A stretch of DNA of 64,000 nt, from the NCBI GenBank assembly GCA_002269645.1, contig NIVC01000093.1, positions 248,001 through 312,000 on the forward strand, given 5' to 3'. The position numbers and the translations under genes are program-made. Shown here one piece after another: positions 1-29,706 of this stretch. The stretch's first letter is position 1, and each line of letters opens with the position of its first letter. The stretch is from Macrostomum lignano. Its lineage: Eukaryota. The notes beneath the pieces were generated by a model, which searched no databases, had not been told where the DNA came from, and was given only the letters and a program-made list of their open reading frames with translations.

Positions 1-289
1 GTTGCGTGGCCTTTAACACAAATTTTCAAATTTTACTGCTTTCCATCGCTCTGATTTTGCAGCAGAAATGATTGCAGCAGCTGATGCAGCTTGAGCGACA
101 GCTCCGCCTTTGCCTTTTTTCTGAGTTTAAAATTTTTGTAGAGTTGTATTGGTACAGTTTGCATCCGATAGTTATTAACTTACTATACCGGAACTGAAGA
201 CACTGCAGTCAGTGAATAAGTATGAGCTGTATCAGCTATCGCTGTATTTAAAAATGCACATTTGTACACCTTGTTTGATTTGCTTCCAG

Positions 290-1221
290 TGGTCGCTCCC
301 GTGGCTTCTGTCACCGTGACGAAATCCAATGTGACCTGTCTTGATGTAGACTGGCCAGCCTCCAACACGTCAGGTGTGACGTACCAGCTCACCTGTGGCT
401 CCAATCCTCCGATTGATGTTGGCAGAGAGCTGAAAGGCAGCTGCTGCGGTCTGCAGTCGGGAGAGAACCACACAGCAACTGTTGTTGTGGTTAAGCCTGG
501 CTTTAACGACAGCTCTCCCGCCAGTACAGTGGGACAGACTCGTGAGTTTTCACAGCTGATGTTTCTGAGTTTCTTGCCTCATTGCCGTGGCATTTTTGAT
601 TCGAACTGTCAAGTTGAACCCAGCAAAGGCTTTGCAGTTAGTCTGTAGAAATCGAAATTTAAACTCAAGGAAAGTTTCAACGAGTGCAATCAGGGCAAAA
701 GAGTGCATTGTATTCATCCACATGTTTCATTGGTATTTTTTGTGACCTGGCTTCTTCGATATTGCCGTGAGGCTTCCAACGTGCATGTGACTTACTGTCA
801 TTTTACAGGGCACTTATGAAGGTTTAATTATTGACATGAATGTCCCAACTTACTAGGGATCTTTTAAATAGTATTTGGTATGTATTTTAAAAACTGCTAG
901 CCTTTATCGACACAGGATTCGATCTCTTCTAACTGACCTTCTTTGTCACATGAACTGCAACCCCGGTTTCAGTGGTGTCACCCGTGGCTTCTGTCACCGT
1001 GACGGGCTCCAACGAGACCTGTCTTGATGTAGACTGGCCAGCCTCCAATACATCGAATGTGACATACCAGCTTGACTGTGGGTCAGGTGCAATTGGAGTG
1101 GACTCAGGAACCTCAGGATCCTGCTGCGGTCTGCAGTCGGGAAAGAGACACACAGTGACTGTTGCTGTTGTCAAGGCTGGTTTTGCCAAGAGCTCTGCCG
1201 CGAGCACAGTCGGGCAGACGC
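290..1221 (+). CDS. Partial gene: two fibronectin type III-like exons (290-541, 973-1221); gene starts left of window
   Basis: Two paralogous 83-84 codon exons (VxPVASVTVT.SN.TCLDVDWPASNTS.VTYQL.CG...SCCGLQSG..HT.TV.VVK.GF). Both have cag| acceptors and |gtgagt donors and are phase 1-1. The W...Y...L....TV pattern is typical of FN3. Confidence 0.75.
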
Positions 1222-1502
1222 GTGAGTATCTTTGATACTTGAAAAATAAACTAGTTTTCGCATTGACTCAGGGCTGAGAAAGGCGGTAGCTAGCTATTCA
1301 GAGTTACCTACCAAAATGTTAGAACTTATTGTATGTTATATCTAGAGATCGGATATAAAATGGGTATTGAAATTATGTTTTTTACAAATTTATCTTATCT
1401 AGTTTTATAACTCACAGAATTTCACCGTAAGAGCAATGTGTTCTGTCAGAAGGCGGTAACTATTTTGCTCCAGAATTAACCGTTTTTTAGATTACATTTT
1501 AA

Positions 1503-2354: not shown

Positions 2355-5300
2355 ATGCGTCCTGAATTATTCTCATTTGCAATTATCGTTGCGATTTCGT
2401 TTTTGACGAGTAAGTAAACTCAACAAAAAGTTTATTATACCTTAAAGAGACTTTAATCTTTAAGTAGCTGAGCCATTATCTCAACGACTTTATCCGTATC
2501 CATGCGTTGGGAAGCTTTGCTTTTGTGAAGCGATCCCCAGCCTATAGAAAACTATCATCACTTTAACTAATAATTTTGCATTTCTATATCGAAATTCACC
2601 TCGAAAAACACCTACTAATTGTTCAAAAAAGATTATACTGAAAATTACATTTATTTAGGCCATTATGCGACAGCGGCCTCTTACTACAGATGGAGGAGTC
2701 TGAATCAATCAGAAGGACGGGACTGCTCAAGCAGTCTTAATCCTGGCTTAAATGTCCACATCAGCGAGGCTCTGGTGGATATCATGATGTATCTCTGGAT
2801 GAATGGTAACATTTTAACAATTATATTTCTTGCATGCAATTCCGACATGAGCCTACGGCGGAGTGGCCAAGGTCTCATACTGCATGTATGCTAAACTATG
2901 GTGGACCCAGGGTATTCAAAGGTTCACACAAAAAATCAGTCGCCACCATTTACCTGCACAAATGTAAACCGAGGGAAAATCCTGCTTATTAGACATGACT
3001 GTTACAGGCAAAGCTTTAACTGCATAGGTTAGGTATTAAAACGGAAAAATGTCGTACGGGAACGGCGATTCACTGGGTGTGCATAGAGAGTGGGTGTGTA
3101 TTGGGAATGGGTCATCCGATAAATCATCGGGGGAGGAACCTAGATATCCAGGGTTAGAATCGTGTAACATTAAAACTTCAGTGTAAGTCCCATCCGTGGT
3201 CACAGCAAATTTTTGATTTTTAAATCGTAATATACGTCTATTAAAGATCATAGCGCTGTCCTTCAGAGACAAACAAAAATGTGCCAGAGATCTGTGGAAA
3301 CGAAGTTCGTTTAACCCATTCGGCATTCCTAGAAAACAATGCGGGCAAAGGTAAGCGATTTTGCTACGCTATTTAAAAAAGCGCTATGTAGGACTTAGAA
3401 ATACAACAAATAAATTGTATTTTAGTGTGCCTAAATCCGCACAACAACGGCGAAATACGGCTCATCAAATCCTTCCACGCGTTGATGAACGTTGAGGCTA
3501 AAGTGACGGCTATCGGCAGTGTGCCAGCAATGTTGGACTACAAAGACTCAGGGTCAGCTACCACATACAGAGGCTACTTTGAAGTTGCCAATAAACCAAT
3601 ATTGACTTCAGGACCGTCTGTTACTGAAATTGCTTATGTAAGCGGTTTCTATAAATGGTCAAAGGCAATATATATTTACCAAAAACATTTGTGCAGATTA
3701 AAAAAAGCGCTTATTTCCAGGCAGTCTACAGACTTCTAGTGACCAACGATTGGTCCTACGTCGCCATTGTGATCGAAGCTGAGGACGGAGCAGTGAGGCT
3801 GTCCCAAGCTCTACAGTCGATGTCCAAGGCCGACCAGAAAGTCTGCTTCCCGATCGTCATCCAACTCACGTCCAGTAATGCGACGGCAGCTGCAAAAGCT
3901 CTCAGGAACTTCGCGTATCCCGACATTCCCCGACTCACTGTCGTATATTCCGGATCCGGGAGCACATTTCTGTCGCTCTGGGACCTCGTCACGGGCTCGG
4001 ATGCATCGACAGCCGACTCGGAAAAGAGATATCAGCTTGTGCTGGTCGGAGACGCTCTTGGAAGCTTCTACCGAGCGACCAACTCGACGAGATGGCGACA
4101 CTTTGGTCTCGGAACACTTTTTGTGTTTCCAGGAGTTCTCGACCCGAATCCGGCGTCGGACACTCTAGCGGTGCTTCTGAAAAACATCAGCAGCACACCG
4201 GAATCGATGGGAGAGTTTCACCGACTTACGGATACTTGGTCACGACTGCAGCATTTCAAGAGCACAACAAGTGTGCAGTGCGACTGGACGAAATTCGGTG
4301 ACCTGTGCTACACTCAGGCGTTGATGTACGATTTCCAGCTGCTGTCATTCTTGCCGCTCATTGGCTCCGCCCTCGACTTTTCGCCAAGCGGAGTGGAGAG
4401 TCTCCGCCGGAAGAGCGTCAGTTTGTCGGACCTCCGATCTTCAGTGCCGTTCGTTGACGCGTTTTTGCGACAAAATTTCACCAACTACTCACTCGCCAGA
4501 GGCTTGAGCCACAGAGATCGAGGCTTCTGGCAACCGATCGTAAAAGTGTACCAGAGCCGGTTTGATTCACGATCGGAGGCGATCCTGGAAAAGCTGGGCG
4601 AGTTAAGGATAGTGCAGGCCGGCTCGGCGAACAAGAACTACGAGTGGGACTTGAGCAAGATGCCCGAGCTGTACGAGTTCAGGGACGGAAATCCTGACAA
4701 TCTGCCTGTTAAGACAGTCAGTGGCAGCTCCGTGTGCCCGCGGAGCTGCCCCGAGTGCTCAAAGTATCGAGGCAAGCAGTCTGTTGAGTATCAGTTCGGC
4801 GACCTTTACATTGGCGCGTTGATCCCAGTGTTTAATAGGGCAACGGATGTGTACAAATGCAGCGACGGAAACTTTGATGAGCAATCGACTGAGTGGTCTA
4901 CAGCTTTTCGATACGTTATTAAACTTGCGGCTTGGGCCAGCGAAGGCGGCGCAACTCAACCCCCTGGCGTTGATGCCTCCCTGGTTGATAAACAGTTCAT
5001 GCTCGGACTGAGGGACCTAGTCTCGAAGGTTCAGCAGAGTCGGACTAGTAAGCTAAAATGGGGCTACGTAATTCTTGACAGTTGCTATTCAGCGCCCCTC
5101 CTGACGAACAGGCTGGCTCTGTTGCTAAATGGCAAGCTGGAGCCTTTAACTGGGCTTAACTACACCAAGTTCGTAGGCTTTATTGGAGAAGCCTCCAGCA
5201 CTCAAACGATGGCGGCTAGCCAGGTGCTCAAGCAATACAGCCTGCCTATTATTAGCTTTGCATCAACATCAACAGCTCTGAGCGACGTTTTTCAATATCC

Positions 5301-7267
5301 GTTCACAATGAGGACAGTGTCATCAGACAACGAGATTATTGAGGCTTTGATGACTATAATAAGGCACTACAATGTCGATTTGATTACAGTTGCTTATGCA
5401 CCAAACGCTTACGGCTTATCGCTTCGCGACGCAATGTTGACCAGAGCCAACCGAGATGGAGTCTGCATCGCCAAACTGCTGGTACTGAATTGCGCTTACA
5501 CAGATACGGTCTGCAAAAGAGAGCTAGCAAACGATATGCGCAGGTCAGGAACTCGATATGTAGCATTTCTATGCGACTCCGTCGACCTCGCCGCATTTCT
5601 CAACTACACTGAGGTAAAACGTTTTTAAGTTTCGAATCTCCATATTTTCTTTTGAAAATTTGTAGCACCTAATCTATCCATGGTTTCAATTTTTAGGTGG
5701 AATCAGACCTCGAATTTATAAATATTTTGGCAACTGAAGACATCGACGAGGTGATGTTTACGGGAAAGAACAATCTCGGTGTGGGAACCACCATGGTGCA
5801 GCTGGTCTCCGCTCCTGAGCCGGGATTCCTCAACTACCTCAACTACTCGCTGACTCGCATGCCCCCGAACTCCAACAACTTGTCCCAGTGGGACCGACTG
5901 TACTTCGAGCTGGTGCACCAATGCTACCTCACGGACAGCTTTGTGCGTAGTGATAAGTACACCCAGCCGTGCTTGCCCAGCATCGTCGCGTCGCATCACA
6001 TCCGCCAGCTCGAGTCCCGATCCGTGTTCGTCATGACGGCGACTCAGACGCTGATCCTCGGTTGCCTGACGGCAATCGACTACTTGTGTCCGGTGGTGAC
6101 GCCCGAGCCGGCGTGTCCGAACTTCTTCAAAGGCAACAGAGTCACACAGGAGCAGCGAGCCAACCTCATCATGTACGGCAGCCGGCTGAAGCCGTCCGGG
6201 ACCACGGCGCAGCGGTTCTCGGGCAAATACGGAGGCGAGGAGTGGTCCTTCCAGAAGATCTTCGAGAACCGGATGGGTCGGACGCCGATGCGGCTGATGC
6301 AGTACCGGAAGATCGGCTCGGCGGAGTACCGCTTCGTGCCGGTGAGTGTGTCACTATTATTGAATCGCGTGTTGGAACTTTTAGGGAGAGTTTAGTCACG
6401 AAAAGATTCGAAATGTGTAATTCTACAGTACCAAGAAGTATTTACTGACACTGATTCATTTCTTAATGAGGTAGAGAAGGAAGAGCAAAGTTTTTTATTC
6501 AGTATATTTGTTGAAAGAAAATCATAAGGTGGATTTCTGTATTTAGGTATTTCGACAAATGGATACGTACATTCATTTAGTGGTAAAATGAGCATTAACA
6601 GAGAAATCTACGGAGTATTATTTTCGTTAGACGAGCGTATGATGGGCGCCCAACCCGCTGACTCCTGAGCTCCCCAATACTGTTCGCAGGCAGGCACGCC
6701 CACACAGACTTTCTAATTGACATGCATGTCCACTCTCTGTACTGTGCTGCACTGCCCCTACTCGTACATTTGATTTTCTTTGCCACCCCAAAATCAACCC
6801 AGTTCGGCCTATTCGACGGCGTGAGCAAATCGAATTTCGCTGAGTCAGCTGAGAAGCTGTTTGCTCAAGAGCGTCAAGTCAAACCGAGTCTAGCCAAAGT
6901 CTGTCGTCGGGCGGAAGATTGCGGCCATCCCAAATGCGTGAACAGCATTAGCCAGTCGACTGCATCAACCGAATCGGGCGTCATCACTCCCAGACCTGCA
7001 CCGTCGCCTGCGCTTGGCCTCCTAGGCCTTCTATTCCTTCCTGGAGTTCTTGTGGGAGTGATCATCTTTTGGTGCCTTCGGCGGCTGCTCCCTAATATTG
7101 GGAGCAGCGAGTCGGATTACGCCTACGGTGATAGAGCGGCCACCGAATTGCCTGAAGCTTCTACATGTACGATGGGGCGAGAGAATAGAGATTCAGGTTT
7201 GTACGATACCGCCTATGACACGGGCACAGAATCGGGCCGTGCTCTGCCAGCGATCAAAGCGTACTAA
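2355..7267 (+). CDS. Single-pass receptor with two tandem class C GPCR-like Venus flytrap (ANF_receptor) modules, paralogue 1; exons 2355-2409, 2659-2805, 3426-3637, 3721-5613, 5697-6341, 6803-7267; about 1138 aa
   Basis: Signal peptide MRPELFSFAIIVAISFLT. All introns GT-AG and phase-consistent. mGluR-like motifs GDLYIGALIPV and FIGEASSTQT...LPIISFASTSTALSD.FQYPFTMRTVSSD, plus LLVTNDWSYVAIV in the first module. One TM (LGLLGLLFLPGVLVGVIIFWCL), then a short tail and stop. Confidence 0.8.
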
Positions 7268-9413
7268 GGACTGGTGCTCACTTGATCGGACTAACCGAAC
7301 AATTTAATACGACACTGAAATGCCACTCTGTTGTTAATTTAACCTAATGACTGATTCGGGTCCAGGGAAAACTGAAAGATAAGGATGCTTCACTTGATTT
7401 TTTCTTAGAAATGCTCTGGAGGCAGGTAAGGAACGTGTGTTTGTCGCGTCGCTAACCCTTTCTACTGCGAATGTGCCACAAGTAGTTTTAACTGTAGCCA
7501 ATCGGTCTAGGGCTCTGCGTCTGCCCCCCTTCTTTCCAGTCAGTTTTGTCAAATTGCTCATTGTAAAGTTGAAATATCTTCCATCAATCCAGACGGTTTA
7601 TGGGGGCACTTGGTGCAATGTGGATTAAGTTCCGAAAACCAGTCTTTTTAAACCGGCAATTTGCTTTCAATTCAAAAAGTTTATATTCGATTCAATTCCG
7701 AGAATAGACTATATAACTGTATATCCGAATTCAGTTGTTTAATTTACGGCCAAGACTGCTAGAAGTTTGTATAATCATATACTGTCAGTGGCTTGAATTG
7801 AAAATTTCACCTCTTTTCGAATGAAGTTAAGGATGAAACCAACCAAATTGTCTGAGTTGAATGCACATTGCACCAGGTGCTACCATAAACCGTCTCTGAA
7901 TTGAATGAAAATATTTCAACTTTGACAGCACATTTAACAAATTAGAATGGAAAGGTGTAGATTCTCAGCATGTAAGTACGCTCGTAAGTAAGCCCAAATT
8001 TGGTAACCATGCATATGTGGCACAGTTTATGTCAAAAAGAGCAACTTTAACAACAACCGAAAAATGGGGCAGCGTGGAGCCAATAAACTGAATAGTAATC
8101 AACCGAGCTAAAAAATTCTACAATTCTACATTGAAATTTTACAAGTGTCATCTTGTGTAAAAACAACAAACTTTTTCTATAGCCAGGAGAGACTATTGCT
8201 GCTATCGTTTAGGGTAACTGTTTATTTATCAGTATAACCGTGAGTCGATCATATATCACTTGCATTACATTTTATCTGCATCTTTTCAAAATTTTGCAAC
8301 CTGTAAATTTAAAGTAGTGAATTGTTTTTTTTCTAATAATGCGATCATCGTATATTTTTTTAAACATCAATACGCCACCAAGGGCTGGCCAAGGCAGGCC
8401 CGAAGCACAAACTTGTACATGTGGATCAAGCTTCCGTATGTAGTAGAACTTTAAAATATTATTATTGTGCAAAACGAAAAAGTTCACCATATTTTTTAAA
8501 TAAAATTACCGATTTTTATGTACTTTTATATTATGAGTCACTGAACAGATACTCGAGAGACAGAGAATCTAAAAATCTGTTGGTATCAAACCGGAATGAT
8601 TTGAATATTGTGTTGCATTTATTTTTTTTTGAAGAAACCAACTAAATTATTTGAACTTGCAGGTGTTATGCCGTAGCTTCCATTCAAGTCAATTGGACAC
8701 ACTCTATTTGTTAAACTTTCTAGATATTTAAGGATTTTACTTTTAAACTAGACGATACATTTTTTAATTGAATCAGTCGGGTGCTATACAGCCTACTGGA
8801 TCGTTCGTTATTAGTAGTATTCTATAATTGCAAAAGTGCCTGCAATAAGAAAATGAAGAAACTATCGATATTAAAGTAACGTAAATTGACCCTCTGAAGC
8901 CGCAGTTAAATTATTTTTAATTGAGACATTATAACAAGACAAAAAGTGAGTCAAAAAAACGAGTAAATGTTTTTAAATCCTTGTTGTCGACCTATTTAGC
9001 CACTTAATACCGTCAAAAATATTTACTACGCTTGAATATTTTTGGTATGGAGCAAAAACAAGCTAAGATTAGCCAAAGGGCTGGACCATTCGTCCCACGC
9101 AATTTGAGGGTAAATAATGCTCGCACGAAAGAGATGAAAAGCTCGGTTTGGTTAGAAAAAGAGATAGGTGAGCGAGAGGTAGGAATTAGAGAGAGAATAG
9201 CTCACTCTTAAAAGCAGGAGTTGAGGGGCAGAAATTTCTTTAGTTGTTGTTCACTATAACCAAACAACTTAACGAAAACAGACATAAAAAACGAATTGCA
9301 TTACACATGGAGCAGAGGCTCCGTAGCTGACTATTTTCTGAACGCTATGCTTTTTGTTCATTTGAAACGCAGAATTGAGTCCGATTAAGGTCGCAGGTCG
9401 GCGAACGTTTCAG

Positions 9414-12400
9414 ATGTGGCTTCGTTTAGGACGCGTCGGCCTACTTGGTTTTGCGTGGATCCTGTTGACTGGTGAGACAGCTCCGTATCTGTTGAGCCAT
9501 TTATGACTTTGTGACAACAAGTGACATATGTCTGTAGAGCTGCCTACGAAATTTCGTATTGATTATGAAATTCTTTTTAGCGCCCCTTGTGCAGATGCCA
9601 CCAATCGGTAGCAATACAATGGACTGGCAAGATGACAATTACCAATATATAGTGTCGATTCCATCCGTTGGTAAATTAGTATACTATTAGGCTAGGGTGC
9701 AACGCCTCAGACTATCCAAGGCCAGAACTTAAGGGGAAATGAGTTACGGAGTTACTCAAGGCACAGTTTTGACCCATATTCGCTTCATACAGAATTGTAC
9801 TGCGCAAGGTCTACAACACCGTTGCTCACATTTCGGTGGAGAAGCCTCAATCAGTCATCTGGTACCAGCTGTACGAACTTGCTCAAGCAGCAGCTTAATG
9901 CCCACGTTAACGAAGCTCTGGTGGACATTCTTATGTACCGGTGGCTTGGTGGTAAATTATTCTTGGTTCTACATGCAACAATATTTCAACTCTAAAACAC
10001 TATGCAACGCAACGAACATGATTACTTAACCCGTAGAATTCGATACGACAATAAAAGAAGTATGCGACAACAGCTTCCAACTGACGGAGTCTGAATTTCT
10101 ACGGTCAAATCTTAATAAAGGTTTGTCGAACTATATGGATTTTTTTAAAATGTCACCGTATGATACGATTTTACGCACCATTCAAAATTTTGACGTTTTA
10201 GTATGCCTCGGTTTGCACAGAATCAGCGAACTCGAGTTCATTCGATCATACTACAGCCTGATGGACATCAGTGCACCCCTTCGAGCGGTCACATCCATTC
10301 CGGCAATCAGCAACTACCAGAATTTGTCAGAAAGTTCAACTAGGAGAGGTTACTATAATAAAGACGCATCGATTCTCACCTCTGGACCGTCGATATTTGA
10401 GACGGCAGATGTACGTTTGCATTGCTAGTTCACAAGGAAGGTCACCTCTCAGTTGAAAACTTATTCCAAATTATTCGTTCCGTACTACTATTCAATTACA
10501 TTTCCAGGCAGTCTACAGACTTCTAGTGACCAACGATTGGTCCTACGTCGCCATTGTGATCGAAGCTGAGGACGGAGCAGTGAGGCTGTCCCAAGCTCTA
10601 CAGTCGATGTCCAAGGCCGACCAGAAAGTCTGCTTCCCGATCGTCATCCAACTCACGTCCAGCAATGCGACGGCAGCTGCAAAAGCTCTCAGGACCTTCG
10701 CGTATCCCGACATTCCCCGACTCACTGTCGTATATTCCGGATCCGGGAGCACATTTCTGTCGCTCTGGGACCTCGTCACGGGCTCGGATGCATCGACAGC
10801 CGACTTGGAAAAGAGATATCAGCTTGTGCTGGTCGGAGACGCTCTTGGAAGCTTCTACCGAGCGACCAACTCGACGAGATGGCGACACTTTGGTCTCGGA
10901 ACACTTTTTGTTTTTCCAGGAGTTCTCGACCCGAATCCGGCGTCGGACACTCTAGCGGTGCTTCTGAAAAACATCAGCAGCACACCGGAATCGATGGGAG
11001 AGTTTCACCGACTTACGGACACTTGGTCACGACTGCAGCATTTCAAGAGCACAACAAGTGTGCAGTGCGACTGGACGAAATTCGGTGACCTGTGCTACAC
11101 TCAGGCGTTGATGTACGATTTCCAGCTGCTGTCATTCTTGCCGCTCATTGGCTCCGCCCTCGACTTTTCGCCAAGCGGAGTGGAGAGTCTCCGCCGGAAG
11201 AGCGTCAGTTTGTCGGACCTCCGATCTTCAGTGCCGTTCGTTGACGCGTTTTTGCGACAAAATTTCACCAACTACTCACTCGCCAGAGGCTTGAGCCACA
11301 GAGATCGAGGCTTCTGGCAACCGATCGTAAAAGTGTACCAGAGCCGGTTTGATTCACGATCGGAGACGATCCTGGAAAAGCTGGGCGAGTTAAGGATAGT
11401 GCAGGCCGGCTCGGCGAACCAAAACTACGAGTGGGACTTGAGCAAGATGCCCGAGCTGTACGAGTTCAGGGACGGAAATCCTGACAATCTGCCTGTTAAG
11501 ACAGTCAGTGGCAGCTCCGTGTGCCCGCGGAGCTGCCCCGAGTGCTCTCATCACAGCGTTAGACAATCCATTGAGTTCAAGCATGGCGATATTTACATAG
11601 GCGCGATTCTACCAATTTTTGACCACGGCACTGACGAGTTCAAGTGCAGCGATGCTAAATTCGATCTATTCGCATCGGAATGGTCGGCCGCTTTTAGGTT
11701 CATCATGTCGCTGACCAACTGGGCAAGCCAAATGACCGAACTGCCCCCTGGAATTGAAGTTGATCTTGTCGATCAGTCGTTTGTGCTAGGGTTGAAGGAC
11801 CTGACTTCAAAGATACACGAGGGTCGTAGCAAGAGGCTCCGATGGGGCTATGTGATTCTGGACAGCTGCTACTCGGCACCATATTTGACTAGCCAACTCT
11901 GGCTTCTGCTAGATGGAAGGCTCGAGCCAGTTGTTAATGTTAACTACTCAAGCTTTGCCGGCTTCATGGGCGACCTGTCTAGCACGCAAACCATGGCTGC
12001 TAGTCAGATTCTGAAGCAGTATAGACTGCCAATTATCAGCTTCGGCTCGACGTCTACCGCGCTTAGTAACGTGTTTCAGTACCCCTACACAATGAGAACT
12101 TTGAGCTCAGATAATGAGATTGTAGAGGCCATGATTAGTTCAATAAGGCATTACAAAGTGGACTTAATTACAGTAGTCTACACGCCAAATGCCTACGGAC
12201 TGTCTCTGAAGAATTCGATGCTGTCAAAGGCCAGCAGAGACAAGATATGCATCTCCAAGCTGCTGCTGTTCGACTGCGGAATCTCCGATCCGACTTGCAA
12301 ACGAAGAGTGGCTCTTCAAATGCGCAACTCTGGCAATCGATACGTGGCTTTTCTGAGCGACGGCACCGACTTCAGAAATTTTTTAAACTACCCTCAGGTA

Positions 12401-13847
12401 AGTCCATCAAGACGTGCACCTATAGTGTTGACTGGAAGAAACAACATTAGAATTAACATCGTGAATGCTAAAATTTACTTAAGGTGGAAACCGATCTGGA
12501 ATATGTTACTATCTTTGCAACGGAGGCAATCGATGCGGACTACTTTGACGGCAGGAACAACCTTGGAGTCGGAACCACCATGGTGCAGCTGGTCTCCGCT
12601 CCTGAGCCGGGATTCCTCAACTACCTCAACTACTCGCTGACTCGCATGCCCCCGAACTCCAACAACTTGTCCCAGTGGGACCGACTGTACTTCGAGCTGG
12701 TGCACCAGTGCTACCTCACGGACAGCTTTGTGCGTAGTGATAAGTACACCCAGCCGTGCTTGCCCAGCATCGTCGCGTCGCATCACATCCGCCAGCTCGA
12801 GTCCCGATCCGTGTTCGTCATGACGGCGACTCAGACGCTGATCCTCGGTTGCCTGACGGCAATCGACTACTTGTGTCCGGTGGTGACGCCCGAGCCGGCG
12901 TGTCCGAACTTCTTCAAAGGCAACAGAGTCACACAGGAGCAGCGAGCCAACCTCATCATGTACGGCAGCCGGCTGAAGCCGTCCGGGACCACGGCGCAGC
13001 GGTTCTCGGGCAAATACGGAGGCGAGGAGTGGTCCTTCCAGAAGATCTTCGAGAACCGGATGGGTCGGACGCCGATGCGGCTGATGCAGTACCGGAAGAT
13101 CGGCTCGGCGGAGTACCGCTTCGTGCAGGTGAGTTGATATCCTTTTGACATGAGGAACTACCAAGCAACTTAGTAGCTTAAGTAGGGATAAAATTTAGAT
13201 TAAATAGGACTAATACGAGCGTACCGTGAAAGTATCCTTATAACTATAACCGTTGTAACGCGCCGGCAGGTAATGATATTACTGGTATGAGTGTAGTAGC
13301 AGCTGAAACTCCGATAGAAAGAAGAGAACTATTCATATTATAATCGTGAAATACGAGCTGTTGAATACATTGACAGTTGGAATAATGGTTATCGGTTGTT
13401 TTCAACAAGTGCATTCCATTCAATCCCAATGCACTCTTGTGCCAGTTCGGTCTGTTCGATGGAATCAACAGTTCGACTTTCACGGCCGCAGCCGAGGAGC
13501 TGTACCAATACGAGCGGCAGTCCAGCTCCGGCCTACTAAAGTCCTGTCGAACTCAAGCAGAATGCGACGGTCCAGAGTGCGTGAATTCGTTTGGCTCCGA
13601 CGGCGACCCCGGTTCCGGTACTTCCGGAAGCAACCTGGACTTGCTGGGGTTGTTGGTGCTTCTGTTTATACCGGGAATCTTAGCAGGTGTTCTGGTAGCC
13701 AAGTACACCGGGAAACCCATTCCTCTGCGGCCCTGCAACTGCGATAGCGAAGCGGACAAAGGCGAGGACTATTACTATTATGCAGATCCCGAAAGTCAGG
13801 ACTCCACCGCGGCAAATGGATTCGACAATCCCGCTGGTCCCAGGTGA
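9414..13847 (+). CDS. Tandem Venus flytrap single-pass receptor, paralogue 2; exons 9414-9471, 9793-9951, 10202-10410, 10508-12397, 12484-13128, 13446-13847 (about 1120 aa); possible extra exon near 14291-14510
   Basis: Signal peptide MWLRLGRVGLLGFAWILLT. Same exon structure and phases as paralogue 1. TM LLGLLVLLFIPGILAGVLVA. The stop TGA at 13845-13847 overlaps a good donor (AG|gtgagc at 13843), so the 3' end is uncertain. Confidence 0.78.
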
Positions 13848-14092
13848 GCGAACTCTCTGGCAGCTTTGAACTGGTAGTTAGTAGTAAAATGAAGTGTTAT
13901 AATTACTATAGTACAGTTAATTAATACTATAGGACATAGAAGAAGACCGCACAGACATATAACCACGGAGACAGAGCTAAGATACCAAGACACTATGAAC
14001 CTAAAGCAGACTTCAGGACAAAAACTACGAAGAACACTAAGACATAAGGGACTACCAGATTATATAACAAAGTGTTTCTAGTGGTCCTTGTA

Positions 14093-14294
<202 letters not shown>

Positions 14295-14829
14295 GTGGCC
14301 ACCCTTCACCCCGCCAGCCTGCCAGTCCAGTCGGATTCCTATTACTATTGCGACCCGGATGCGACAGCGGGCGGCAGCTCGGGTGCAGCAGTGTCACGGA
14401 AGTTGCCAACGTTGCCGCAGGAGGAGCCGCCGACGCCGAAGAGGCGCGTATTTCGCGCACTGGACGCGAGCGACCCCACCACGGAGCCCGTCACATCGGC
14501 AGAGGATTAACAAATAGTCAATAGAGTCCAATTTCAAAGGATAACTAGTGTGAATAGTCAAGTTTTATATATCAGATCTACTTGCTCTGTTCAGTTACCG
14601 TGTCACGTGTTATCAATTTGCCTCAATAATTCATGCATTTTCTTAACTTCGATACCAATTGATAGTTTTTCTTTAAACTACCTGCTGCTTTAGGCAATTC
14701 AGATGCTGTTGTAGAAAGTAGTGCCCAAACGATCACTTATCCCAGCTAGCAGCCTTTGTATATGTCAGTTGGCTCCATGTAAAGAGCCGTCTTGTCGTCG
14801 TTTAAGCGAATGCGTTGTTCGATTTTATT

Positions 14830-17512: not shown

Positions 17513-20500
17513 ATGGCAGCAAGGGTGAGTGCAGTGGGAATTCTATAGTAATTTATTGACTTGAGCAGGCACACATTTTGTACCTTTCTTTCATATCCTT
17601 CTCTCTCTATCCTTCCCCCTCTATCCTTCCCCCTCTATCATTCTCTCTCTATCCTTCTCTCTCTATCCTTCTCTCTCTATCCTTCTCTCTCTATCCTTCC
17701 CCCTCTATCCTTCTCTCTCTATCCTTCTCTCTCTATCCTTCTCTCTCTATCCTTCCCCCCTATCCTTCTCTCTCTATCCTTCCCTCTGTATCCTTCTCTC
17801 TCTATCCTTCCCTCTGTATCCTTCTCTCTATCCTTCCCTCTGTATCCTTCCCTCTGTATCCTTCTCTCTCTATCCTTCCCTCTCTATCCTTCCCTCTCTA
17901 TCCTTCTCTCTCTCTATCCTCCTCTCTCTATATCCTTCTCTCTCTATATCCTTCTCTCTCTATCCTTCCCTCTCTATCCTTCTCTCTCTCTATCCTTCCC
18001 TCTCTATCCTTCTCTCTCTATATCCTTCTCTCTCTATATCCTTCTCTCTCTATCCTTCCCTCTCTATCCTTCATTCTCTTTCCTACCCTCTGTATCCTTC
18101 TCTCTCTATCCTTCCCTCTCTATCCTTCATTCTCTTTCCTACCCTCTGTATCCTTCTCTCTCTATCCTTCCCTCTCTCTCTATCCTTCCCTCTCTATCCT
18201 TCTCTCTCTATCCTTCCCTCTCTCTCTATCCTTCCCTCTCTATCCTTCTCTCTCTATCCTTCCCTCTCTCTCTATCCTTCCCTCTCTATCCTTCTCTCTC
18301 TCTATCCTTCTCTCTCTATATCCTTCTCTCTCTATATCCTTCTCTCTCTATCCTTCCCTCTCTCTCTATCCTTCCCTCTCTATCCTTCTCTCTCTATCCT
18401 TCCCTCTCTCTCTATCCTTCTCTCTCTATCCTTCTCTCTCTATCCTTCCCTCTCTCTCTATCCTTCCCTCTCTATCCTTCTCTCTCTCTATCCTTCCCTC
18501 TCTATCCTTCTCTCTCTCTATCCTTCTCTCTCTATATCCTTCTCTCTCTCTCTATCCTTCCCTCTATCCTTCTCTCTCTCTATCCTTCTCTCTCTATCCT
18601 TCCCTCTCTCTCTATCCTTCCCTCTCTATCCTTCTCTCTCTATCCTTCCCTCTCTCTCTATCCTTCCCTCTCTATCCTTCATTCTCTTTCCTACCCTCTG
18701 TATCCTTCTCTCTGTATCCTTCTCTCTATCCTTCCCTCTGTATCCTTCCCTCTCTATCCTTCCCTCTCTATCCTTCCCTCTGTATCCTTCTCTCTGTATC
18801 CTTCTCTCTGTATCCTTCTCTCTCTATCCTTCTCTCTCTATCCTTCCCTCTCTATCCCTCTCTCTCTTTCCTACCCTCTGTATCCTTCTCTCTCTATCCT
18901 TCCCTCTCTATTCTTCCCTCTCTATCCTTCGATCTCTTTGCTTTTCCTTCTCTATCCTTTCTAACTGACGACAGTCTCTCATACTTTAACAATTCATACA
19001 TTATGCCTACAACAAAAGAACGAATACAATTGAAGGATTGGTTGGCCTAAAAACAGCTAGCTATGCATTCAATTTTCAGTGCGACACCGATCCAATATTG
19101 GCAAACGAACAGCGGCTGAAGAATCAAAAGGTAAGTTTATCGTCAAATGGGTATCAGTTAAGTCGCTTTTATTGCCGCTGAATGTTTAAGACAATCATTC
19201 AGTGGTGTAAACTCGCACTAGGACTACTTTTTATTGCACATTGCAGCAACTGGTCCAACAGCTTCATGTGCAGCTGAAGTCCTACAACGAAGCATTTAGA
19301 CGTGAGTCAATGAAATAAAATCAGCTGGGAGAAATCAGCGATAAGAGAGGAGAGATGAGATCGGAGAGAGATGAGATCGGAGAGATGAGGTCGGGGAGAT
19401 GAGATCGGAGAGAGATGAGATCAGAGAGAGATGAGGTCGGGGAGAGATGAGATCAGAGAGAGATGAGATCGGAGAGAGATGAGATCGGAGAGAGATGAGA
19501 TCAGAAAGAGATGAGGTCGGGGAGAGATGAGATCGGAGAGAGATGAGATCGGAGAGAGATGAGATCAGAAAGAGATGAGATCGAAGATAGATGAGATCGG
19601 AGAAATGAGGTCGGGGAGATGAGATCGGAGAGAGATGAGATCAGAAAGAGATGAGGCCAGGGAGAGATGAGATCGAAGAGAGATGAGATCAGAAAGAGAT
19701 GAGGTCGGGGAGAGATTTCGAAGATAGATGAGATCGGAGAAATGAGGTCGGGGAGATGAGATCGGAGAGAGATGAGATCAGAAAGAGATGAGGCCGGGGA
19801 GAGATGAGATCGGAGAGAGATGAGATCAGAAAGAGATGAGGCCGGGGAGAGATGAGATCGGAGAGAGATGAGATCGGAGAGATGAGGTCGGGGAGATGAG
19901 ATCGGAGAGAGATGAGATCAGAAAGAGATGAGGCCGGGGAGAGATGAGATCGGAGAGAGATGAGATCGGAGAGAGATGAGATCAGAAAGAGATGAGATCG
20001 AAGATAGATGAGATCGGAGAAATGAGGTCGGGGAGATGAGATCGGAGAGAGATAAGATCGAATAGAAGTGAGATAGGAGAGATGAAATCTGCAGACGAGA
20101 TCAGAAACAGGTCCCACGCTCGAACATTTAACCCTCCCGCGAGAAGGCTTCATCACGGCTGAGAAGTCCTTCTTCGACGCGCTGGACAACATGTGCGAGG
20201 CCAACTGGGAACTCAAAGCAGACTTCACCGCTTCTCTTAAGGTAAATTTTATATGACTTTTTTGACAAATCAAAGCAAAAAGTTCTCCTACTTACAGTAG
20301 TTACATGTATAATAACATTTAATAATTTGATTCCAGGCAATGCAAAATATTGCCGAAAGTGGAGCGAGAAATTTGGAAACGATTCCTGTTGAGGAAACTA
20401 TCGTGTTTCGCGACCAGTTCGGTCCATACGAGGTAAATAGTGTAAAGCAGTGCAATTCTGGTTCTCGCTGCAAAATGCACCAATAGAGATGGGTAGTTTT

Positions 20501-24640: not shown

Positions 24641-25029
24641 CCTTCCCCTGGCCTGCAGTCATGCACTAGGTTCCCTATCTGGCCCTTCAGGAAAGAAATT
24701 TTTCGACCTTTGGCACAATAATGAAGAAGTTTTTCAGTTTTTTAGAACTTAGTCTAATTCTCAAAATCTAGTTTAAGTACAATACATAAGTAATATAGGA
24801 GTCCACTCACAAGTTGGTTATTGAAAATTGTTAAAAATTGCTTTAAAAATTAAAATGCTAAAATTTCAATGGTTCTTATCTCTGCAGTGTACTGGTATCC
24901 TACGGACGGATTTTTCACGATAAAATTATTGGCCTGCGCCCATGTATGCTGCTACAATCGTATTTATGCTACGGAGTTATACGGCTATTATATATATTGC
25001 TATTGTTTTACTAGGGACGGCTGGAATTG

Positions 25030-25043
25030 ACAGGCAGTCAGGC

Positions 25044-25084
<41 letters not shown>

Positions 25085-25107
25085 GGCAGACAGACAGACA
25101 GACAGGC

Positions 25108-25140
<33 letters not shown>

Positions 25141-25141
25141 C

Positions 25142-25209
<68 letters not shown>

Positions 25210-25299
25210 GCAGACAGACAGACAGACAGACAGACAGATAGATAGACAGACAGACAGACAGGCAGATAGACAGACAGACAGACAGACAGGCAGTCAGGC

Positions 25300-25346
<47 letters not shown>

Positions 25347-25362
25347 GACACAGGCAGACAGG
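25030..25362. repeat. (GACA)n microsatellite
   Basis: Read directly. Confidence 0.96.
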
Positions 25363-29249: not shown

Positions 29250-29409
29250 ACAGACAAGTAGACAGAAGGACTGGCAGACAGAAAGACACACACAGACAAA
29301 GACAGACAGACAGAAAGACAGACGGACAGACAGACAGAAAGACAGACGGACAGACACGTAGACAGACAGACAGACAGACAGACAGATAGATAGATAGACA
29401 GACAGACAC

Positions 29410-29446
<37 letters not shown>

Positions 29447-29523
29447 TACAGACAGACAGACAGACAGATAGATAGACAGACAGACACAGACAGACAGACA
29501 GACAGATAGATAGACAGACAGAC

Positions 29524-29608
<85 letters not shown>

Positions 29609-29625
29609 TAGATAGACAGACAGAC

Positions 29626-29696
<71 letters not shown>

Positions 29697-29706
29697 CAGA
29701 CAGACA
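29250..29706. repeat. (GACA)n microsatellite with GATA/GACACA interruptions
   Basis: Read directly. Confidence 0.95.

What the first reader, a model, noticed from the sequence alone, without database searches (positions are those of the whole stretch)
2355..13847. Class C GPCR-type ectodomains without the GPCR: double Venus flytrap, single-pass receptors
Seen: both genes encode signal peptide, a degenerate VFT, a short Cys linker (VCPRSCPEC), a second VFT with clear mGluR/CaSR-like ligand-site motifs (GEASSTQT, SFASTSTALSD, MRTVSSD), a Cys knot, one TM helix and a short tail. No 7TM, cyclase or kinase sequence follows. Established: VFTs normally sit on class C 7TM receptors, iGluRs or receptor guanylyl cyclases; NPR-C is the known VFT + one TM + short-tail case. 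Inference: a lineage-specific family of amino-acid or ion sensors, decoys or co-receptors.
Basis: partly seen in the sequence, partly recalled or inferred. Interest (0 to 1): 0.7.

Follow-up and report, generated by a model that had tools for sequence, protein, structure and literature searches.

The report
Tandem Venus-flytrap single-pass receptor genes
Two neighbouring flatworm genes encode cell-surface proteins with two glutamate-receptor-type ligand-binding "flytrap" modules on a single membrane anchor; they belong to an uncharacterised family that also occurs in molluscs and brachiopods.

Summary
Two clean 7-exon genes on the + strand (G1 2355-7267, 1166 aa; G2 9414-13847, 1148 aa) each encode a signal peptide, a degenerate VFT, a CxxxCxxC linker, an mGluR-like VFT, a 3-Cys stalk, one TM helix and a tail of about 45-60 aa. 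No NCD3G, 7TM, kinase or cyclase sequence was found in the proteins. No class C 7TM or further VFT coding sequence was found elsewhere in the 64 kb window.

- **N-terminal module:** it is a true but decayed VFT. It is recognisable only through relatives (hhalign 96.5%, HMM iE 6e-9) and by predicted fold (Foldseek E 2e-12 to mGluR VFTs). It has 0/5 of the class C amino-acid-binding residues.
- **VFT2:** it keeps 5/5 of those residues and superposes on mGluR1 (TM 0.84).
- **Family range:** "lineage-specific" is wrong. More than 30 collinear proteins, all named "uncharacterized", occur in bivalves, gastropods and Lingula, mostly with both VFTs intact. Many carry a juxtamembrane Y-x-x-P tail motif.
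- **Other multi-VFT forms:** a coral has a triple-VFT single-pass protein. Amphioxus has an independently duplicated double-VFT 7TM receptor.
- **G1 versus G2:** they are old duplicates (synonymous sites saturated) carrying two recent gene-conversion tracts at 99% identity.

Function is inferred, not shown: probably an amino-acid-type sensor that signals or is sorted through its tyrosine-rich tail. I found no paper describing the family.

The parts
2355..7267 (+). Gene G1, 7 exons (2355-2409, 2659-2805, 3267-3350, 3426-3637, 3721-5613, 5697-6341, 6803-7267), 1166 aa, stop TAA at 7265-7267
   Evidence: Spliced translation is in frame with GT-AG at every junction. The UniRef M. lignano fragment model P0001 is 97% identical to G1 over the matched stretches, aa 61-138 and 171-906. 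Paralog P0002 matches G1 aa 19-1105 and gives collinear tblastn hits on exons 2-6.
9414..13847 (+). Gene G2, 7 exons (9414-9471, 9793-9951, 10037-10120, 10202-10410, 10508-12397, 12484-13128, 13446-13847), 1148 aa, stop TGA at 13845-13847, which overlaps a possible GT donor
   Evidence: Intron positions and phases are the same as in G1.
2355..2409 (+). G1 signal-peptide exon (MRPELFSFAIIVAISFLT); the G2 equivalent is 9414-9471 (MWLRLGRVGLLGFAWILLT)
   Evidence: Hydrophobic N-terminal core followed by a phase-1 GT donor. No homology support; this is sequence logic only.
2659..4731 (+). G1 VFT1 (aa about 25-503, exons 2-5a): degenerate Venus flytrap. The G2 equivalent is 9793-11518.
   Evidence: No Pfam or PDB sequence hit. 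hhalign against the relatives' VFT1 gives 96.5% probability, E 9.5e-10. The HMM of the relatives' VFT1 hits aa 160-365 at iE 6e-9. The AF2 model has pTM 0.76, and Foldseek matches mGluR2/3/5/8 VFTs at E 2e-12, TM 0.5-0.58. It has 0/5 amino-acid pentad residues.
4732..4758 (+). Inter-VFT linker VCPRSCPEC (C505, C509, C512); in G2 at 11519-11545
   Evidence: These three cysteines are invariant columns across 34 family sequences.
4759..6853 (+). G1 VFT2 (aa about 513-1029, exons 5b, 6 and the start of 7): mGluR-type Venus flytrap. The G2 equivalent is about 11546-13496.
   Evidence: Pfam ANF_receptor E 4e-28. PDB phmmer best hit is mGluR5, E 5e-17. AF2 pLDDT is about 90. Foldseek matches 1ewk_A (mGluR1 with glutamate) at E 1e-23, TM 0.84.
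5197..5738 (+). G1 VFT2 amino-acid-binding pentad codons: S659 (5197-5199), T682 (5266-5268), D702 (5326-5328), Y730 (5410-5412), E811 (5736-5738). The conserved 'GIC' cysteine is C748.
   Evidence: These fall in the HMM-alignment columns equivalent to mGluR1 S165, T188, D208, Y236 and D318. G1 and G2 score 5/5; paralog P0002 scores 2/5. The pairwise HMMER alignment to mGluR5 agrees for the first four residues and is offset by one at the fifth.
6902..6937 (+). G1 post-VFT2 3-Cys stalk (C1046, C1052, C1057; KVCRRAEDCGHPKC); in G2 at 13545-13580
   Evidence: These are invariant columns in the family alignment. Pfam gives no NCD3G hit.
7013..7084 (+). G1 transmembrane helix (aa 1083-1106); in G2 at about 13641-13709
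   Evidence: Kyte-Doolittle maximum and AF2 helix 1081-1107. The relatives have a single TM at the same position.
7085..7264 (+). G1 cytoplasmic tail (60 aa, acidic, Tyr-rich: DYAYGD, LYDTAYDTG). The G2 tail is about 13710-13844 and contains DYYYYADP.
   Evidence: Disordered in AF2. A family-wide juxtamembrane YxxP motif is present in G2 (YADP) and P0002 (YDVP) but not strictly in G1.
3713..4760 (+). Gene-conversion tract 1, 99.2% identical to 10500-11547 (8 mismatches in 1048 bp). It starts 8 bp upstream of the exon-5 acceptor and ends just after the Cys linker.
   Evidence: blastn. dS is 0.02 inside the tract, against saturated synonymous divergence (pS about 0.8) outside it.
5768..6347 (+). 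Gene-conversion tract 2, 99.0% identical to 12555-13134. It ends 6 bp past the exon-6 donor.
   Evidence: blastn; dS 0.04.

Best explanation
**Shown**
- G1 and G2 are tandem paralogs in a Macrostomum lignano-type genome.
- Each encodes a type I single-pass membrane glycoprotein. The ectodomain consists of two class C GPCR-type Venus flytrap modules in series.
- Each module is followed by a 3-cysteine mini-linker. Then come one TM helix and a short, disordered, acidic, tyrosine-rich tail.
- They are divergent members of an unnamed, uncharacterised family that is also present in molluscs and brachiopods.
- In Macrostomum the distal VFT1 has lost all five residues of the class C alpha-amino-acid-binding signature. 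The membrane-proximal VFT2 keeps all five.

**Inferred mechanism**
- VFT2 binds an L-amino acid or a close derivative in its cleft and closes on it.
- The 'GIC' lobe-2 cysteine is conserved in both VFTs (C208, C748). In mGluRs this cysteine is disulfide-bonded to the cysteine-rich domain. Here it probably ties each VFT to its 3-Cys linker, so that closure or dimer rearrangement is passed rigidly to the TM helix.
- The output is not a G protein or an intrinsic enzyme. It is the tail, whose juxtamembrane Tyr motif (family consensus [DE]-x-Y-[IL]-x-P, a YxxP type) would serve as a phosphotyrosine docking site or a sorting site.
- The degenerate VFT1 probably acts as a structural, dimerising or regulatory module.

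**History of the pair:** the genes are ancient duplicates kept partly identical by recent gene conversion, while the ligand-binding half of VFT2 and the tails have diverged.
For: **Gene models and architecture**
- Gene models.
- Only an ANF_receptor domain is detected.
- VFT2 resembles mGluR by sequence and by predicted fold.
- The N-domain is a VFT through intermediates and by predicted fold.
- The pentad is 5/5 in VFT2 and 0/5 in VFT1.

**Family**
- 1235 hits in the representative search, including the full-length paralog P0002 (42% identity).
- More than 30 proteins of about 1000-1500 aa have two Pfam ANF_receptor domains and one TM at about residue 1000-1070.
- Linker and stalk cysteines are invariant, as is the GIC cysteine in both VFTs.
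- Family VFT1 domains form a clade with 80% bootstrap support.

**Tail motif:** YxxP occurs in 20 of 37 tails (5.0 expected) and Y[ILV]xP in 12 of 37 (0.7 expected).

**Selection:** pN is 0.24 against pS 0.80 in the unconverted part of VFT2.

**Downstream sequence:** tblastn found no class C 7TM coding sequence anywhere in the window. No ORF of 110 aa or more downstream looks like a receptor exon; the five downstream ORFs scanned with Pfam that gave a match hit CYFIP or PAICS families.

**Precedent:** a flatworm VFT without 7TM binds glutamate and sits at the membrane (SmGBP, PMC3206071).
Against: - No transcript, expression or binding data were available, so the function is entirely inferred.
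- G1 itself lacks a strict YxxP motif. The motif could be an endocytic signal rather than a signalling one.
- The N-domain AF2 model has only moderate confidence (pLDDT 69). It used an MSA containing genuine VFT1 sequences, so it is not independent of the alignment.
- Placement of the Macrostomum VFT2 inside the family VFT2 clade has only 38% NJ bootstrap support (long branch).
- The fifth pentad residue depends on the alignment: the family HMM and the pairwise HMMER alignment differ by one residue.
- The glutamate side-chain clamp residues of mGluR1 (R78, K409; identities from memory) were not reliably aligned. From my reading of the alignment, no Arg sits at the R78-equivalent position, so the ligand, if any, is probably not glutamate.
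- The G2 stop codon overlaps a possible splice donor.
Confidence: 0.55

Rival explanations
1. Ligand sink, clearance or presentation protein. The ectodomain binds an amino acid or small metabolite but does not signal. It buffers, internalises or hands over the ligand, in the manner of NPR-C or of bacterial and SmGBP-type binding proteins. The tail Tyr motif would then be an endocytic or sorting signal.
For: The tail is short and has no Pfam domain. SmGBP is a flatworm VFT with no signalling domain that binds glutamate at the worm surface. Tail sequence is poorly conserved between G1, G2 and P0002 apart from acidic and Tyr content.
Against: The rigid VFT-linker cysteine system and the fixed position of the TM helix are conserved across phyla. 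A pure binder would not need these. Family tails reach more than 400 aa in some molluscs and share a positionally conserved Y[IL]xP motif at tail residues about 13-19. That motif is not a classical YxxPhi endocytic signal.
Confidence: 0.2
2. Non-ligand-binding co-receptor, auxiliary subunit or adhesion molecule. The VFTs would serve as protein-protein interaction or dimerisation scaffolds, as the amino-terminal domains of iGluRs do, partnering with a class C GPCR, a VKR or another receptor.
For: VFT1 in Macrostomum has lost the whole pentad, and paralog P0002 has lost 3/5 in VFT2 as well, yet both keep intact reading frames. So family members can persist without the amino-acid site. Class C VFTs are obligate dimerisers (established knowledge).
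Against: G1 and G2 VFT2 retain 5/5 pentad residues. In 29 relatives both VFTs keep them at 25-29 of 29 (T/S or D/E substitutions counted as conserved) per position. This argues for selection on a small-molecule site. VFT2 lobe 1 is under purifying selection.
Confidence: 0.17
3. Annotation or assembly artefact. Either the real products are ordinary class C GPCRs or receptor enzymes whose downstream exons lie outside the models, or the two genes are pseudogenes or a mis-assembled duplicate.
For: No transcript evidence could be obtained. The G2 stop overlaps a GT donor. The two 99%-identical blocks could in principle come from assembly collapse.
Against: Both ORFs are intact through 7 exons, each with a TM helix followed by an in-frame stop. 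tblastn with six class C 7TM regions finds nothing in 64 kb at E < 1. More than 30 homologs from other phyla, several carrying RefSeq XP_ accessions, end the same way. The conserved blocks still differ by 8 and 6 substitutions and are flanked by sequence with saturated synonymous divergence under purifying selection.
Confidence: 0.05

Closest known systems
Class C (family 3) GPCRs: mGluR1/5, CaSR, T1R
   Same: VFT2 is the same fold and sequence family (PF01094). The best PDB sequence hit is mGluR5 at E 5e-17, and Foldseek gives TM 0.84 to 1ewk_A. It has the same S/T/D/Y/acidic alpha-amino-acid pentad and the same lobe-2 'GIC' cysteine that couples the VFT to the cysteine-rich domain in mGluRs.
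   Different: There are two VFTs in series. There is no nine-cysteine NCD3G domain, only 3 cysteines after each VFT. There is no 7tm_3 domain, only one TM helix and a 45-60 aa tail.
Unnamed tandem-VFT single-pass proteins of molluscs and brachiopods (e.g. Lingula XP_013382567.1, Haliotis XP_048248200.1, Saccostrea XP_062604070.1, Solemya KAL5010376.1; all 'uncharacterized/hypothetical')
   Same: The full-length architecture is collinear: signal peptide, VFT1, C-x-C-x-C linker, VFT2, 3-Cys stalk, a TM helix at about residue 1000-1100 and a tail. The linker, stalk and GIC cysteines are invariant. The N-domain matches their VFT1 specifically.
   Different: Identity is only 16-20%. The Macrostomum VFT1 has lost the ligand signature and is invisible to Pfam. 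The Macrostomum tails are short, and G1 lacks the strict Y[IL]xP motif.
SmGBP, the truncated metabotropic glutamate receptor of Schistosoma mansoni (Taman and Ribeiro 2011, PMC3206071)
   Same: It is a flatworm mGluR-type VFT with no 7TM that is membrane-associated. Its conserved Ser/Thr/Tyr/Asp binding residues and its glutamate binding were shown experimentally.
   Different: SmGBP is 488 aa with a single VFT, no cysteine linker and no C-terminal TM. Its relationship to this family was not tested, because I did not have the SmGBP sequence. The 488-aa hit P0072 is not SmGBP.
Venus kinase receptors (VKR) of flatworms, insects and other invertebrates
   Same: A VFT on a single TM helix; activated by amino acids; discovered in a flatworm.
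   Different: A VKR has one VFT and an intracellular insulin-receptor-like tyrosine kinase. No kinase domain is present here or in the long-tailed relatives.
NPR-C (natriuretic peptide clearance receptor) and receptor guanylyl cyclases
   Same: An ANF_receptor-type ectodomain on a single-pass anchor. NPR-C also has a short tail.
   Different: They have a single VFT of the natriuretic-peptide type. No NPR appears among the 60 PDB sequence hits or 50 fold hits listed, which are mGluR, CaSR and T1R. No cyclase or kinase-homology domain is present.
Other multi-VFT receptors: bacterial BvgS/EvgS (two VFTs, TM, histidine kinase), Trypanosoma receptor adenylate cyclases, amphioxus double-VFT 7TM receptor (XP_035696128.1), Pocillopora triple-VFT single-pass protein (XP_058969623.1)
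   Same: Flytrap modules in series ahead of a membrane anchor.
   Different: The bacterial and trypanosome proteins have different VFT classes and enzymatic outputs. The two amphioxus VFTs are each other's closest relatives, which indicates an independent duplication (57% bootstrap), and they sit on a 7tm_3 domain. The coral protein has three VFTs.

Membership tests
Class C GPCR (mGluR/CaSR/T1R type) | ANF_receptor-type Venus flytrap ligand-binding domain | tested here: met
   PF01094 E 4e-28 for G1 and 4e-24 for G2. mGluR5 E 5e-17. Foldseek TM 0.84 to mGluR1.
Class C GPCR (mGluR/CaSR/T1R type) | Nine-cysteine domain (NCD3G, PF07562) between the VFT and the membrane | tested here: not met
   No NCD3G hit at E <= 1. 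Only three cysteines lie between VFT2 and the TM helix. As a positive control, NCD3G was detected in P0133.
Class C GPCR (mGluR/CaSR/T1R type) | Seven-transmembrane domain (7tm_3, PF00003) | tested here: not met
   No 7tm_3 in either protein. There is a single hydrophobic helix. tblastn of six class C 7TM regions against the whole window finds nothing at E < 1.
Spiralian tandem-VFT single-pass family (unnamed) | Two VFTs in series, with the N-terminal one orthologous to the family VFT1 | tested here: met
   hhalign of the Macrostomum N-domain against family VFT1 gives 96.5%, E 9.5e-10, against E 0.015 for VFT2. The VFT1 HMM hits at iE 6e-9 while the VFT2 HMM gives no hit. Predicted fold.
Spiralian tandem-VFT single-pass family (unnamed) | Three-cysteine linker after each VFT and a GIC cysteine in each VFT | tested here: met
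   C208, C505, C509, C512, C748, C1046, C1052 and C1057 are invariant columns in 34 sequences. The GIC cysteine is present in 29/29 relatives in both VFTs.
Spiralian tandem-VFT single-pass family (unnamed) | Single TM helix about 1000-1100 residues from the N-terminus and no catalytic domain in the tail | tested here: met
   G1 TM at 1083 and G2 TM at 1081; relatives at 981-1070. No Pfam domain in the tails.
Spiralian tandem-VFT single-pass family (unnamed) | VFT2 groups with the family VFT2 domains in a domain tree | tested here: inconclusive
   The grouping is recovered in the NJ tree, but with only 38% bootstrap support because of the long Macrostomum branch.
Spiralian tandem-VFT single-pass family (unnamed) | Juxtamembrane YxxP / Y[IL]xP tail motif | tested here: inconclusive
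   Present in G2 (YADP) and P0002 (YDVP) but absent in strict form from G1 (DYAYGD). Only 20 of 37 family members have it.
NPR-C-type clearance receptor | Single natriuretic-peptide-type VFT, one TM and a short tail | tested here: not met
   There are two VFTs. The 60 PDB sequence hits and 50 fold hits listed are mGluR, CaSR and T1R, with no NPR among them. The Gi-activating tail sequences of NPR-C were not tested.
Venus kinase receptor (VKR) | Intracellular tyrosine kinase domain | tested here: not met
   No Pkinase or PK_Tyr hit. The tail is 45-60 aa.
SmGBP-type truncated mGluR | Single VFT of about 490 aa with no cysteine linker and no C-terminal TM; orthology to Smp_052660 | tested here: not met
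   The architecture differs (two VFTs, linkers, TM). P0072 does not carry SmGBP's published residues.

The most novel reading that the evidence does not exclude
The window holds two members of a previously undescribed receptor class, present in at least Platyhelminthes, Mollusca and Brachiopoda. In this class, amino-acid binding by tandem mGluR-type flytraps is transmitted across a single TM helix to a phosphotyrosine (YxxP) docking tail. That would be a third way of coupling a class C VFT to the cell interior, beside G-protein coupling (7TM) and intrinsic kinase (VKR). Macrostomum would show a derived state in which the distal flytrap has become a non-binding regulatory module.
Probability: 0.3. 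Interest if true: 0.75.

Novelty: new variant of a known kind. Interest (0 to 1): 0.55.

Why it matters
Venus flytrap modules are the ligand sensors of glutamate, GABA-B, calcium and taste receptors, and they are drug targets. How flytrap closure is read out has been studied mainly on 7TM, channel, cyclase and kinase chassis.

A conserved family that strings two such modules on a single helix with a tyrosine-motif tail would add a new chassis. It could also identify new amino-acid or nutrient sensors in molluscs, brachiopods and flatworms.

Macrostomum lignano is an experimentally tractable flatworm (to my knowledge RNAi and transgenesis are available). That makes this locus a practical entry point to a family for which I found no experimental work.

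The G1/G2 pair also gives a natural contrast. Conversion keeps VFT1 and the C-terminal half of VFT2 identical, while the ligand-binding half of VFT2 and the tails have diverged.

Tried and rejected
1. **The search for homologous proteins.** It was run with G1, with the 34-sequence family alignment and with the VFT1 alignment. Only M. lignano fragment models came back (P0001, P0160, P0003). The word index seems unable to reach 16-20% identity relatives. The family was found instead through the exhaustive representative search.

2. **Giant 'multi-VFT' hits** of 1800-3900 aa with up to 10 VFT stretches (P0004-P0016). They are named 'CASR/V2R protein, partial' from Polypterus. I take them to be tandem receptor genes fused by gene prediction, not true multi-VFT proteins.

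3. **Idea that the 488-aa hit P0072 is SmGBP.** Rejected: the published SmGBP residues and glycosylation sites do not match. This hit and similar 450-510 aa hits look like linker-plus-VFT2 fragments of family members.

4. **Idea that the single-VFT relative P0099 is a Venus kinase receptor.** Rejected: it has no kinase domain.

6. **Pfam scan of raw forward frames downstream of G2.** tblastn with 7TM regions and inspection of ORFs of 110 aa or more were used instead. Small kinase or cyclase exons were therefore not excluded rigorously.

7. **Macrostomum-only N-domain profile against PDB sequences.** Nothing found (E 0.85), so VFT1 cannot be recognised without intermediates.

8. **Shared origin of the double VFT with the amphioxus double-VFT GPCR.** Not supported: its two VFTs pair with each other.

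9. **Literature searches** for tandem or double VFT, truncated class C receptors and class C receptors in molluscs. No description of this family was found.

Full report
**What is in the sequence**

The window is eukaryotic: it has introns and abundant micro- and minisatellites. Its only close database match is a UniRef 'ANF_receptor domain-containing protein' of the flatworm Macrostomum lignano, P0001. BLASTP gives 93% identity over 73% of the query, and phmmer gives 97% over the matched stretches. I therefore treat the window as M. lignano or a very close relative.

I rebuilt both by hand and checked them by script.
- G1 has exons 2355-2409, 2659-2805, 3267-3350, 3426-3637, 3721-5613, 5697-6341 and 6803-7267 (1166 aa).
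- G2 has exons 9414-9471, 9793-9951, 10037-10120, 10202-10410, 10508-12397, 12484-13128 and 13446-13847 (1148 aa).

Every intron is GT-AG, and phases and positions are the same in both genes. Exons 2-6 are matched collinearly by tblastn with an annotated M. lignano paralog, P0002 (PAA84059.1, 1182 aa). By phmmer, P0002 aligns at 42% identity from G1 residue 19 to 1105, which takes in the exon-7 stalk and TM helix. The signal-peptide exons rest on sequence logic alone.

**Domain content**

Pfam sees one family only, ANF_receptor (PF01094), in residues about 610-850 of each protein (E 4e-28 and 4e-24). It finds no NCD3G, 7tm_3, kinase or cyclase.

Against PDB sequences the same region is closest to mGluR5, mGluR1 and mGluR3, then T1R2 and T1R3 (best E 5e-17).

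An AlphaFold2 model of full-length G1, built on a 34-sequence family alignment, has pLDDT of about 90 across residues 520-1020. It has a single long helix at 1081-1107 and a disordered tail. By Foldseek the confident half superposes on glutamate-bound mGluR1 (1ewk_A, TM 0.84 normalised to the target, E 1e-23).

After VFT2 there are only three cysteines (C1046, C1052, C1057). A Ser/Thr/Pro-rich stretch follows, then the TM helix and a tail of 60 aa (G1) or about 45 aa (G2).

**Is the first half really a flytrap?**

Direct tests fail. There is no Pfam hit and no PDB sequence hit for residues 1-600. A profile built from Macrostomum N-domains alone finds nothing in the PDB (E 0.85).

The answer comes from relatives.
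- In the mollusc and brachiopod homologs, Pfam detects two ANF_receptor domains, and the first covers about residues 70-450.
- A profile of the Macrostomum N-domains aligns to a profile of those VFT1 domains with 96.5% probability (E 9.5e-10, 227 columns). It aligns to their VFT2 only at E 0.015.
- An HMM of the relatives' VFT1 hits G1 residues 160-365 at iE 6e-9, while the VFT2 HMM does not hit there.
- An AF2 model of residues 1-504 (pLDDT 69, pTM 0.76) has the alternating beta-alpha pattern of a periplasmic-binding-protein fold.
- That model matches mGluR2, mGluR3, mGluR5 and mGluR8 flytraps at E 2e-12 to 1e-10, probability 1.0, TM 0.5-0.58 over about 500 columns.

One caveat: the MSA behind that model contained genuine VFT1 sequences, so the fold result is not independent of the alignment. 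Taken together, the two-flytrap reading stands, and 'degenerate' is the right word.

**Ligand-site residues**

I aligned all VFT domains to one HMM. I then read off the columns of the five residues that, from my knowledge of mGluR1 structures, hold the alpha-amino-acid moiety in class C receptors: S165, T188, D208, Y236 and D318.
- G1 VFT2 has S659, T682, D702, Y730 and E811, and G2 has the same residues (5/5).
- Paralog P0002 has only 2/5.
- The 29 mollusc and brachiopod relatives carry the signature in both VFTs at 25-29 of 29 per position, counting T/S or D/E substitutions as conserved. Four 7TM class C receptors used as a reference also carry it.
- At the corresponding columns of the Macrostomum VFT1 the residues are N, A, V, G, G in G1, with I/A/I/G/G in G2 and F/A/I/G/G in P0002. 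That is 0/5.

The pairwise HMMER alignment to mGluR5 agrees for four positions and is shifted by one at the fifth.

The lobe-2 'GIC' cysteine is invariant in both VFTs of every family member (C208 and C748 in G1). So are the three cysteines after each VFT. In mGluRs, from memory, that cysteine is disulfide-linked to the cysteine-rich domain and is needed for coupling. I infer that each VFT is pinned to its 3-Cys linker in the same way. This could not be checked because model coordinates are not exposed.

**The family**

An exhaustive phmmer search of 1.84 billion representatives gave 1235 hits at E <= 1e-3. Besides P0002 and a few Macrostomum fragments, the top of the list has two kinds of protein.

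The first kind is 1800-3900 aa 'proteins' with up to ten VFT stretches. They are named 'CASR/V2R protein, partial' from Polypterus. I take them to be fused models of tandem vomeronasal-type receptor genes and discount them.

The second kind is dozens of proteins of about 1000-1500 aa. The query's VFT2 matches them at the same position (about 560-930), a weaker VFT match lies at about 100-250, and there is a single strong hydrophobic segment at about 980-1070. Those I could name come from:
- Lingula anatina;
- Haliotis rufescens, H. rubra, H. cracherodii and H. asinina;
- Solemya velum, Sinanodonta woodiana and Potamilus streckersoni;
- Bulinus truncatus and Batillaria attramentaria;
- Saccostrea cucullata and Pinctada imbricata.

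All are labelled uncharacterized or hypothetical. The long-tailed members have no Pfam domain in the tail. Identity to G1 is 16-20%.

In an NJ tree of VFT domains the family VFT1 domains form a clade with 80% bootstrap support. The VFT2 domains, with the Macrostomum trio on a long branch, form another clade with only 38% support. The duplication therefore predates the mollusc-brachiopod split and probably the flatworm split. The weak tree signal for Macrostomum is compensated by the collinear architecture, the invariant cysteines and the VFT1-specific profile match.

Other multi-VFT forms turned up.
- A Branchiostoma 'mGluR3-like' protein has two ANF_receptor domains plus 7tm_3. It is 1307 aa in every Branchiostoma record listed (B. 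floridae, B. lanceolatum and a B. floridae x B. japonicum hybrid).
- Its two VFTs are each other's nearest relatives, which points to an independent duplication (57% bootstrap).
- A Pocillopora coral protein has three full ANF_receptor domains and one TM helix.

**The tail**

Tails vary from about 20 to more than 400 aa. A Tyr motif recurs 13-19 residues after the membrane: DYITP, DYIHP, AYLHP, IYLNP, DYINP, TYLTP.
- YxxP occurs within 45 residues of the TM helix in 20 of 37 members, against 5.0 expected from shuffled tails.
- Y[ILV]xP occurs in 12 of 37, against 0.7 expected.
- G2 has YADP and P0002 has YDVP. G1 has DYAYGD and LYDTAYDTG but no strict YxxP.

From general knowledge, pYxxP and pY[ILV]x[P] are preferred by Crk-, Nck-, Abl- and PLC-gamma-type SH2 domains. 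That is a lead, not a test.

**G1 versus G2**

The proteins are a mosaic: 98-100% identical over residues about 167-513 and 821-1012, and 12-78% identical elsewhere.

At DNA level, 3713-4760 matches 10500-11547 at 99.2%, and 5768-6347 matches 12555-13134 at 99.0%. Nothing else aligns by blastn.

Synonymous divergence is saturated outside the blocks (pS about 0.8) and is 0.02-0.04 inside them. Non-synonymous divergence in the unconverted VFT2 half is 0.24.

So the duplication is old, both copies are under purifying selection, and two tracts were recently homogenised by gene conversion. Tract 1 begins 8 bp before the exon-5 acceptor and tract 2 ends 6 bp after the exon-6 donor. I take this to mean that diverged introns limit the tracts.

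The homogenised parts are most of VFT1 with its linker and the C-terminal half of VFT2. The free-running parts are the N-terminal part of VFT1, the part of VFT2 carrying four of the five pentad residues, and the stalk, TM helix and tail.

**Surroundings**

tblastn with six class C 7TM regions finds nothing in the window at E < 1. Family proteins hit only the two genes.

Downstream of G2 lie simple repeats. Further on, on the minus strand, are a CYFIP gene (34277-40134) and a PAICS gene (56814-62739). No cyclase or kinase was seen among the ORFs I scanned. The nearest AATAAA or ATTAAA signals lie about 800-1000 nt after each stop.

**Comparison with what is known**

The nearest characterised proteins by sequence and fold are the mGluRs, but two of the three defining class C modules were tested and are absent.

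In flatworms there are two precedents for a class C-type VFT off a 7TM chassis.
- SmGBP is a 488-aa single VFT. It binds glutamate and is membrane-associated on the male schistosome surface (PMC3206071).
- The Venus kinase receptors have a VFT, one TM helix and a tyrosine kinase.

Neither has two VFTs, the 3-Cys linkers or this tail. NPR-C shares only the gross 'VFT, one TM, short tail' outline. Tandem VFTs ahead of one TM helix are known in bacterial BvgS and EvgS and in trypanosome adenylate cyclases, with unrelated VFT classes and enzymatic outputs.

Six literature searches found no paper on the spiralian family. The library is incomplete, so this is absence of evidence only.

**Verdict**

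It is wrong on 'lineage-specific' and loose on 'Cys knot'.

The best-supported reading has four parts:
- G1 and G2 are divergent flatworm members of an uncharacterised, phylum-spanning tandem-VFT single-pass receptor family.
- VFT2 is a probable amino-acid-type sensor.
- VFT1 is a decayed module.
- The tyrosine-rich tail is the likely output or sorting element.

All functional statements are inference. The protein sequences of the relatives are already in public databases, but as far as I could find the family has not been described. I rate it a new variant of a known kind, of moderate interest.

Noticed in passing
window 3713-4760 vs 10500-11547; 5768-6347 vs 12555-13134: Two 99%-identical DNA tracts sit inside otherwise saturated paralogs. 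These are recent gene-conversion tracts whose outer ends sit within 8 bp of exon boundaries. They homogenise most of VFT1 with its linker and the C-terminal half of VFT2. The ligand-binding half of VFT2 and the tails are left diverged.
   Followed up: yes
relatives P0025, P0028, P0050, P0051, P0057, P0067, P0075, P0079, P0092, P0117, P0119, P0144 (tails); G2 about 13710-13844: A positionally conserved juxtamembrane Y-[IL]-x-P motif (YxxP type) occurs in the cytoplasmic tails of the family. It is found in 12 of 37 members against 0.7 expected by shuffling. It may be an SH2-docking or sorting signal.
   Followed up: partly
P0081 (Branchiostoma XP_035696128.1) and P0166 (Pocillopora XP_058969623.1): Amphioxus has a class C GPCR with two ANF_receptor domains ahead of 7tm_3; Pfam detects no NCD3G in it. 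A coral has a protein with three full ANF_receptor domains on a single TM helix. Multi-flytrap ectodomains seem to have arisen repeatedly in animals.
   Followed up: partly
window 183-1235, + strand ORFs 262-648 and 972-1235: Two similar ORF segments (VTVT.SN.TCLDVDWPASNTS.VTYQL.CGS...CCGLQSG..HT.TV.VVK.GF) lie just upstream of G1. They look like repeated exons at the 3' end of another gene cut by the window edge. Pfam gives no hit.
   Followed up: partly
window 34277-40134, - strand: A CYFIP (cytoplasmic FMR1-interacting protein) gene: FragX_IP at E 4e-163 on the 856-aa exon 37564-40134, and E 7e-42 on 34277-34726.
   Followed up: partly
window 56814-62739, - strand: Exons of a bifunctional purine-synthesis gene of PAICS type: AIRC domain at 56814-57227 and SAICAR_synt at 62368-62739.
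   Followed up: partly
window 51469-53301, - strand: A 610-aa ORF containing a tandem repeat of about 15-16 aa (PPKPLCADKEVEACID, roughly 15 copies). It is followed by a Pro/Ser-rich C-terminus. No Pfam family matches.
   Followed up: no
window 14072-14310, 24977-25376, 28954-29772, 32965-33400; also 17561-19050, 20745-21206, 22234-23178, 27710-28580, 35265-35642, 36525-37135, 53409-53988: Very dense (CTGT)n-type microsatellites and several families of minisatellites fill much of the intergenic space. They create long spurious ORFs on both strands ([21 protein letters not shown] and [20 protein letters not shown] repeats).
   Followed up: no
window 47001-47781, + strand: Two adjacent ORFs with a signal-peptide-like start and Cys/Trp spacing reminiscent of a C-type lectin or similar small secreted domain. 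No Pfam hit at E <= 0.001.
   Followed up: partly
window 13845-13850: The G2 stop codon TGA is embedded in CAG|GTGAGC, a good splice-donor context. An alternative transcript that reads past the stop into a further exon cannot be excluded without RNA data.
   Followed up: no
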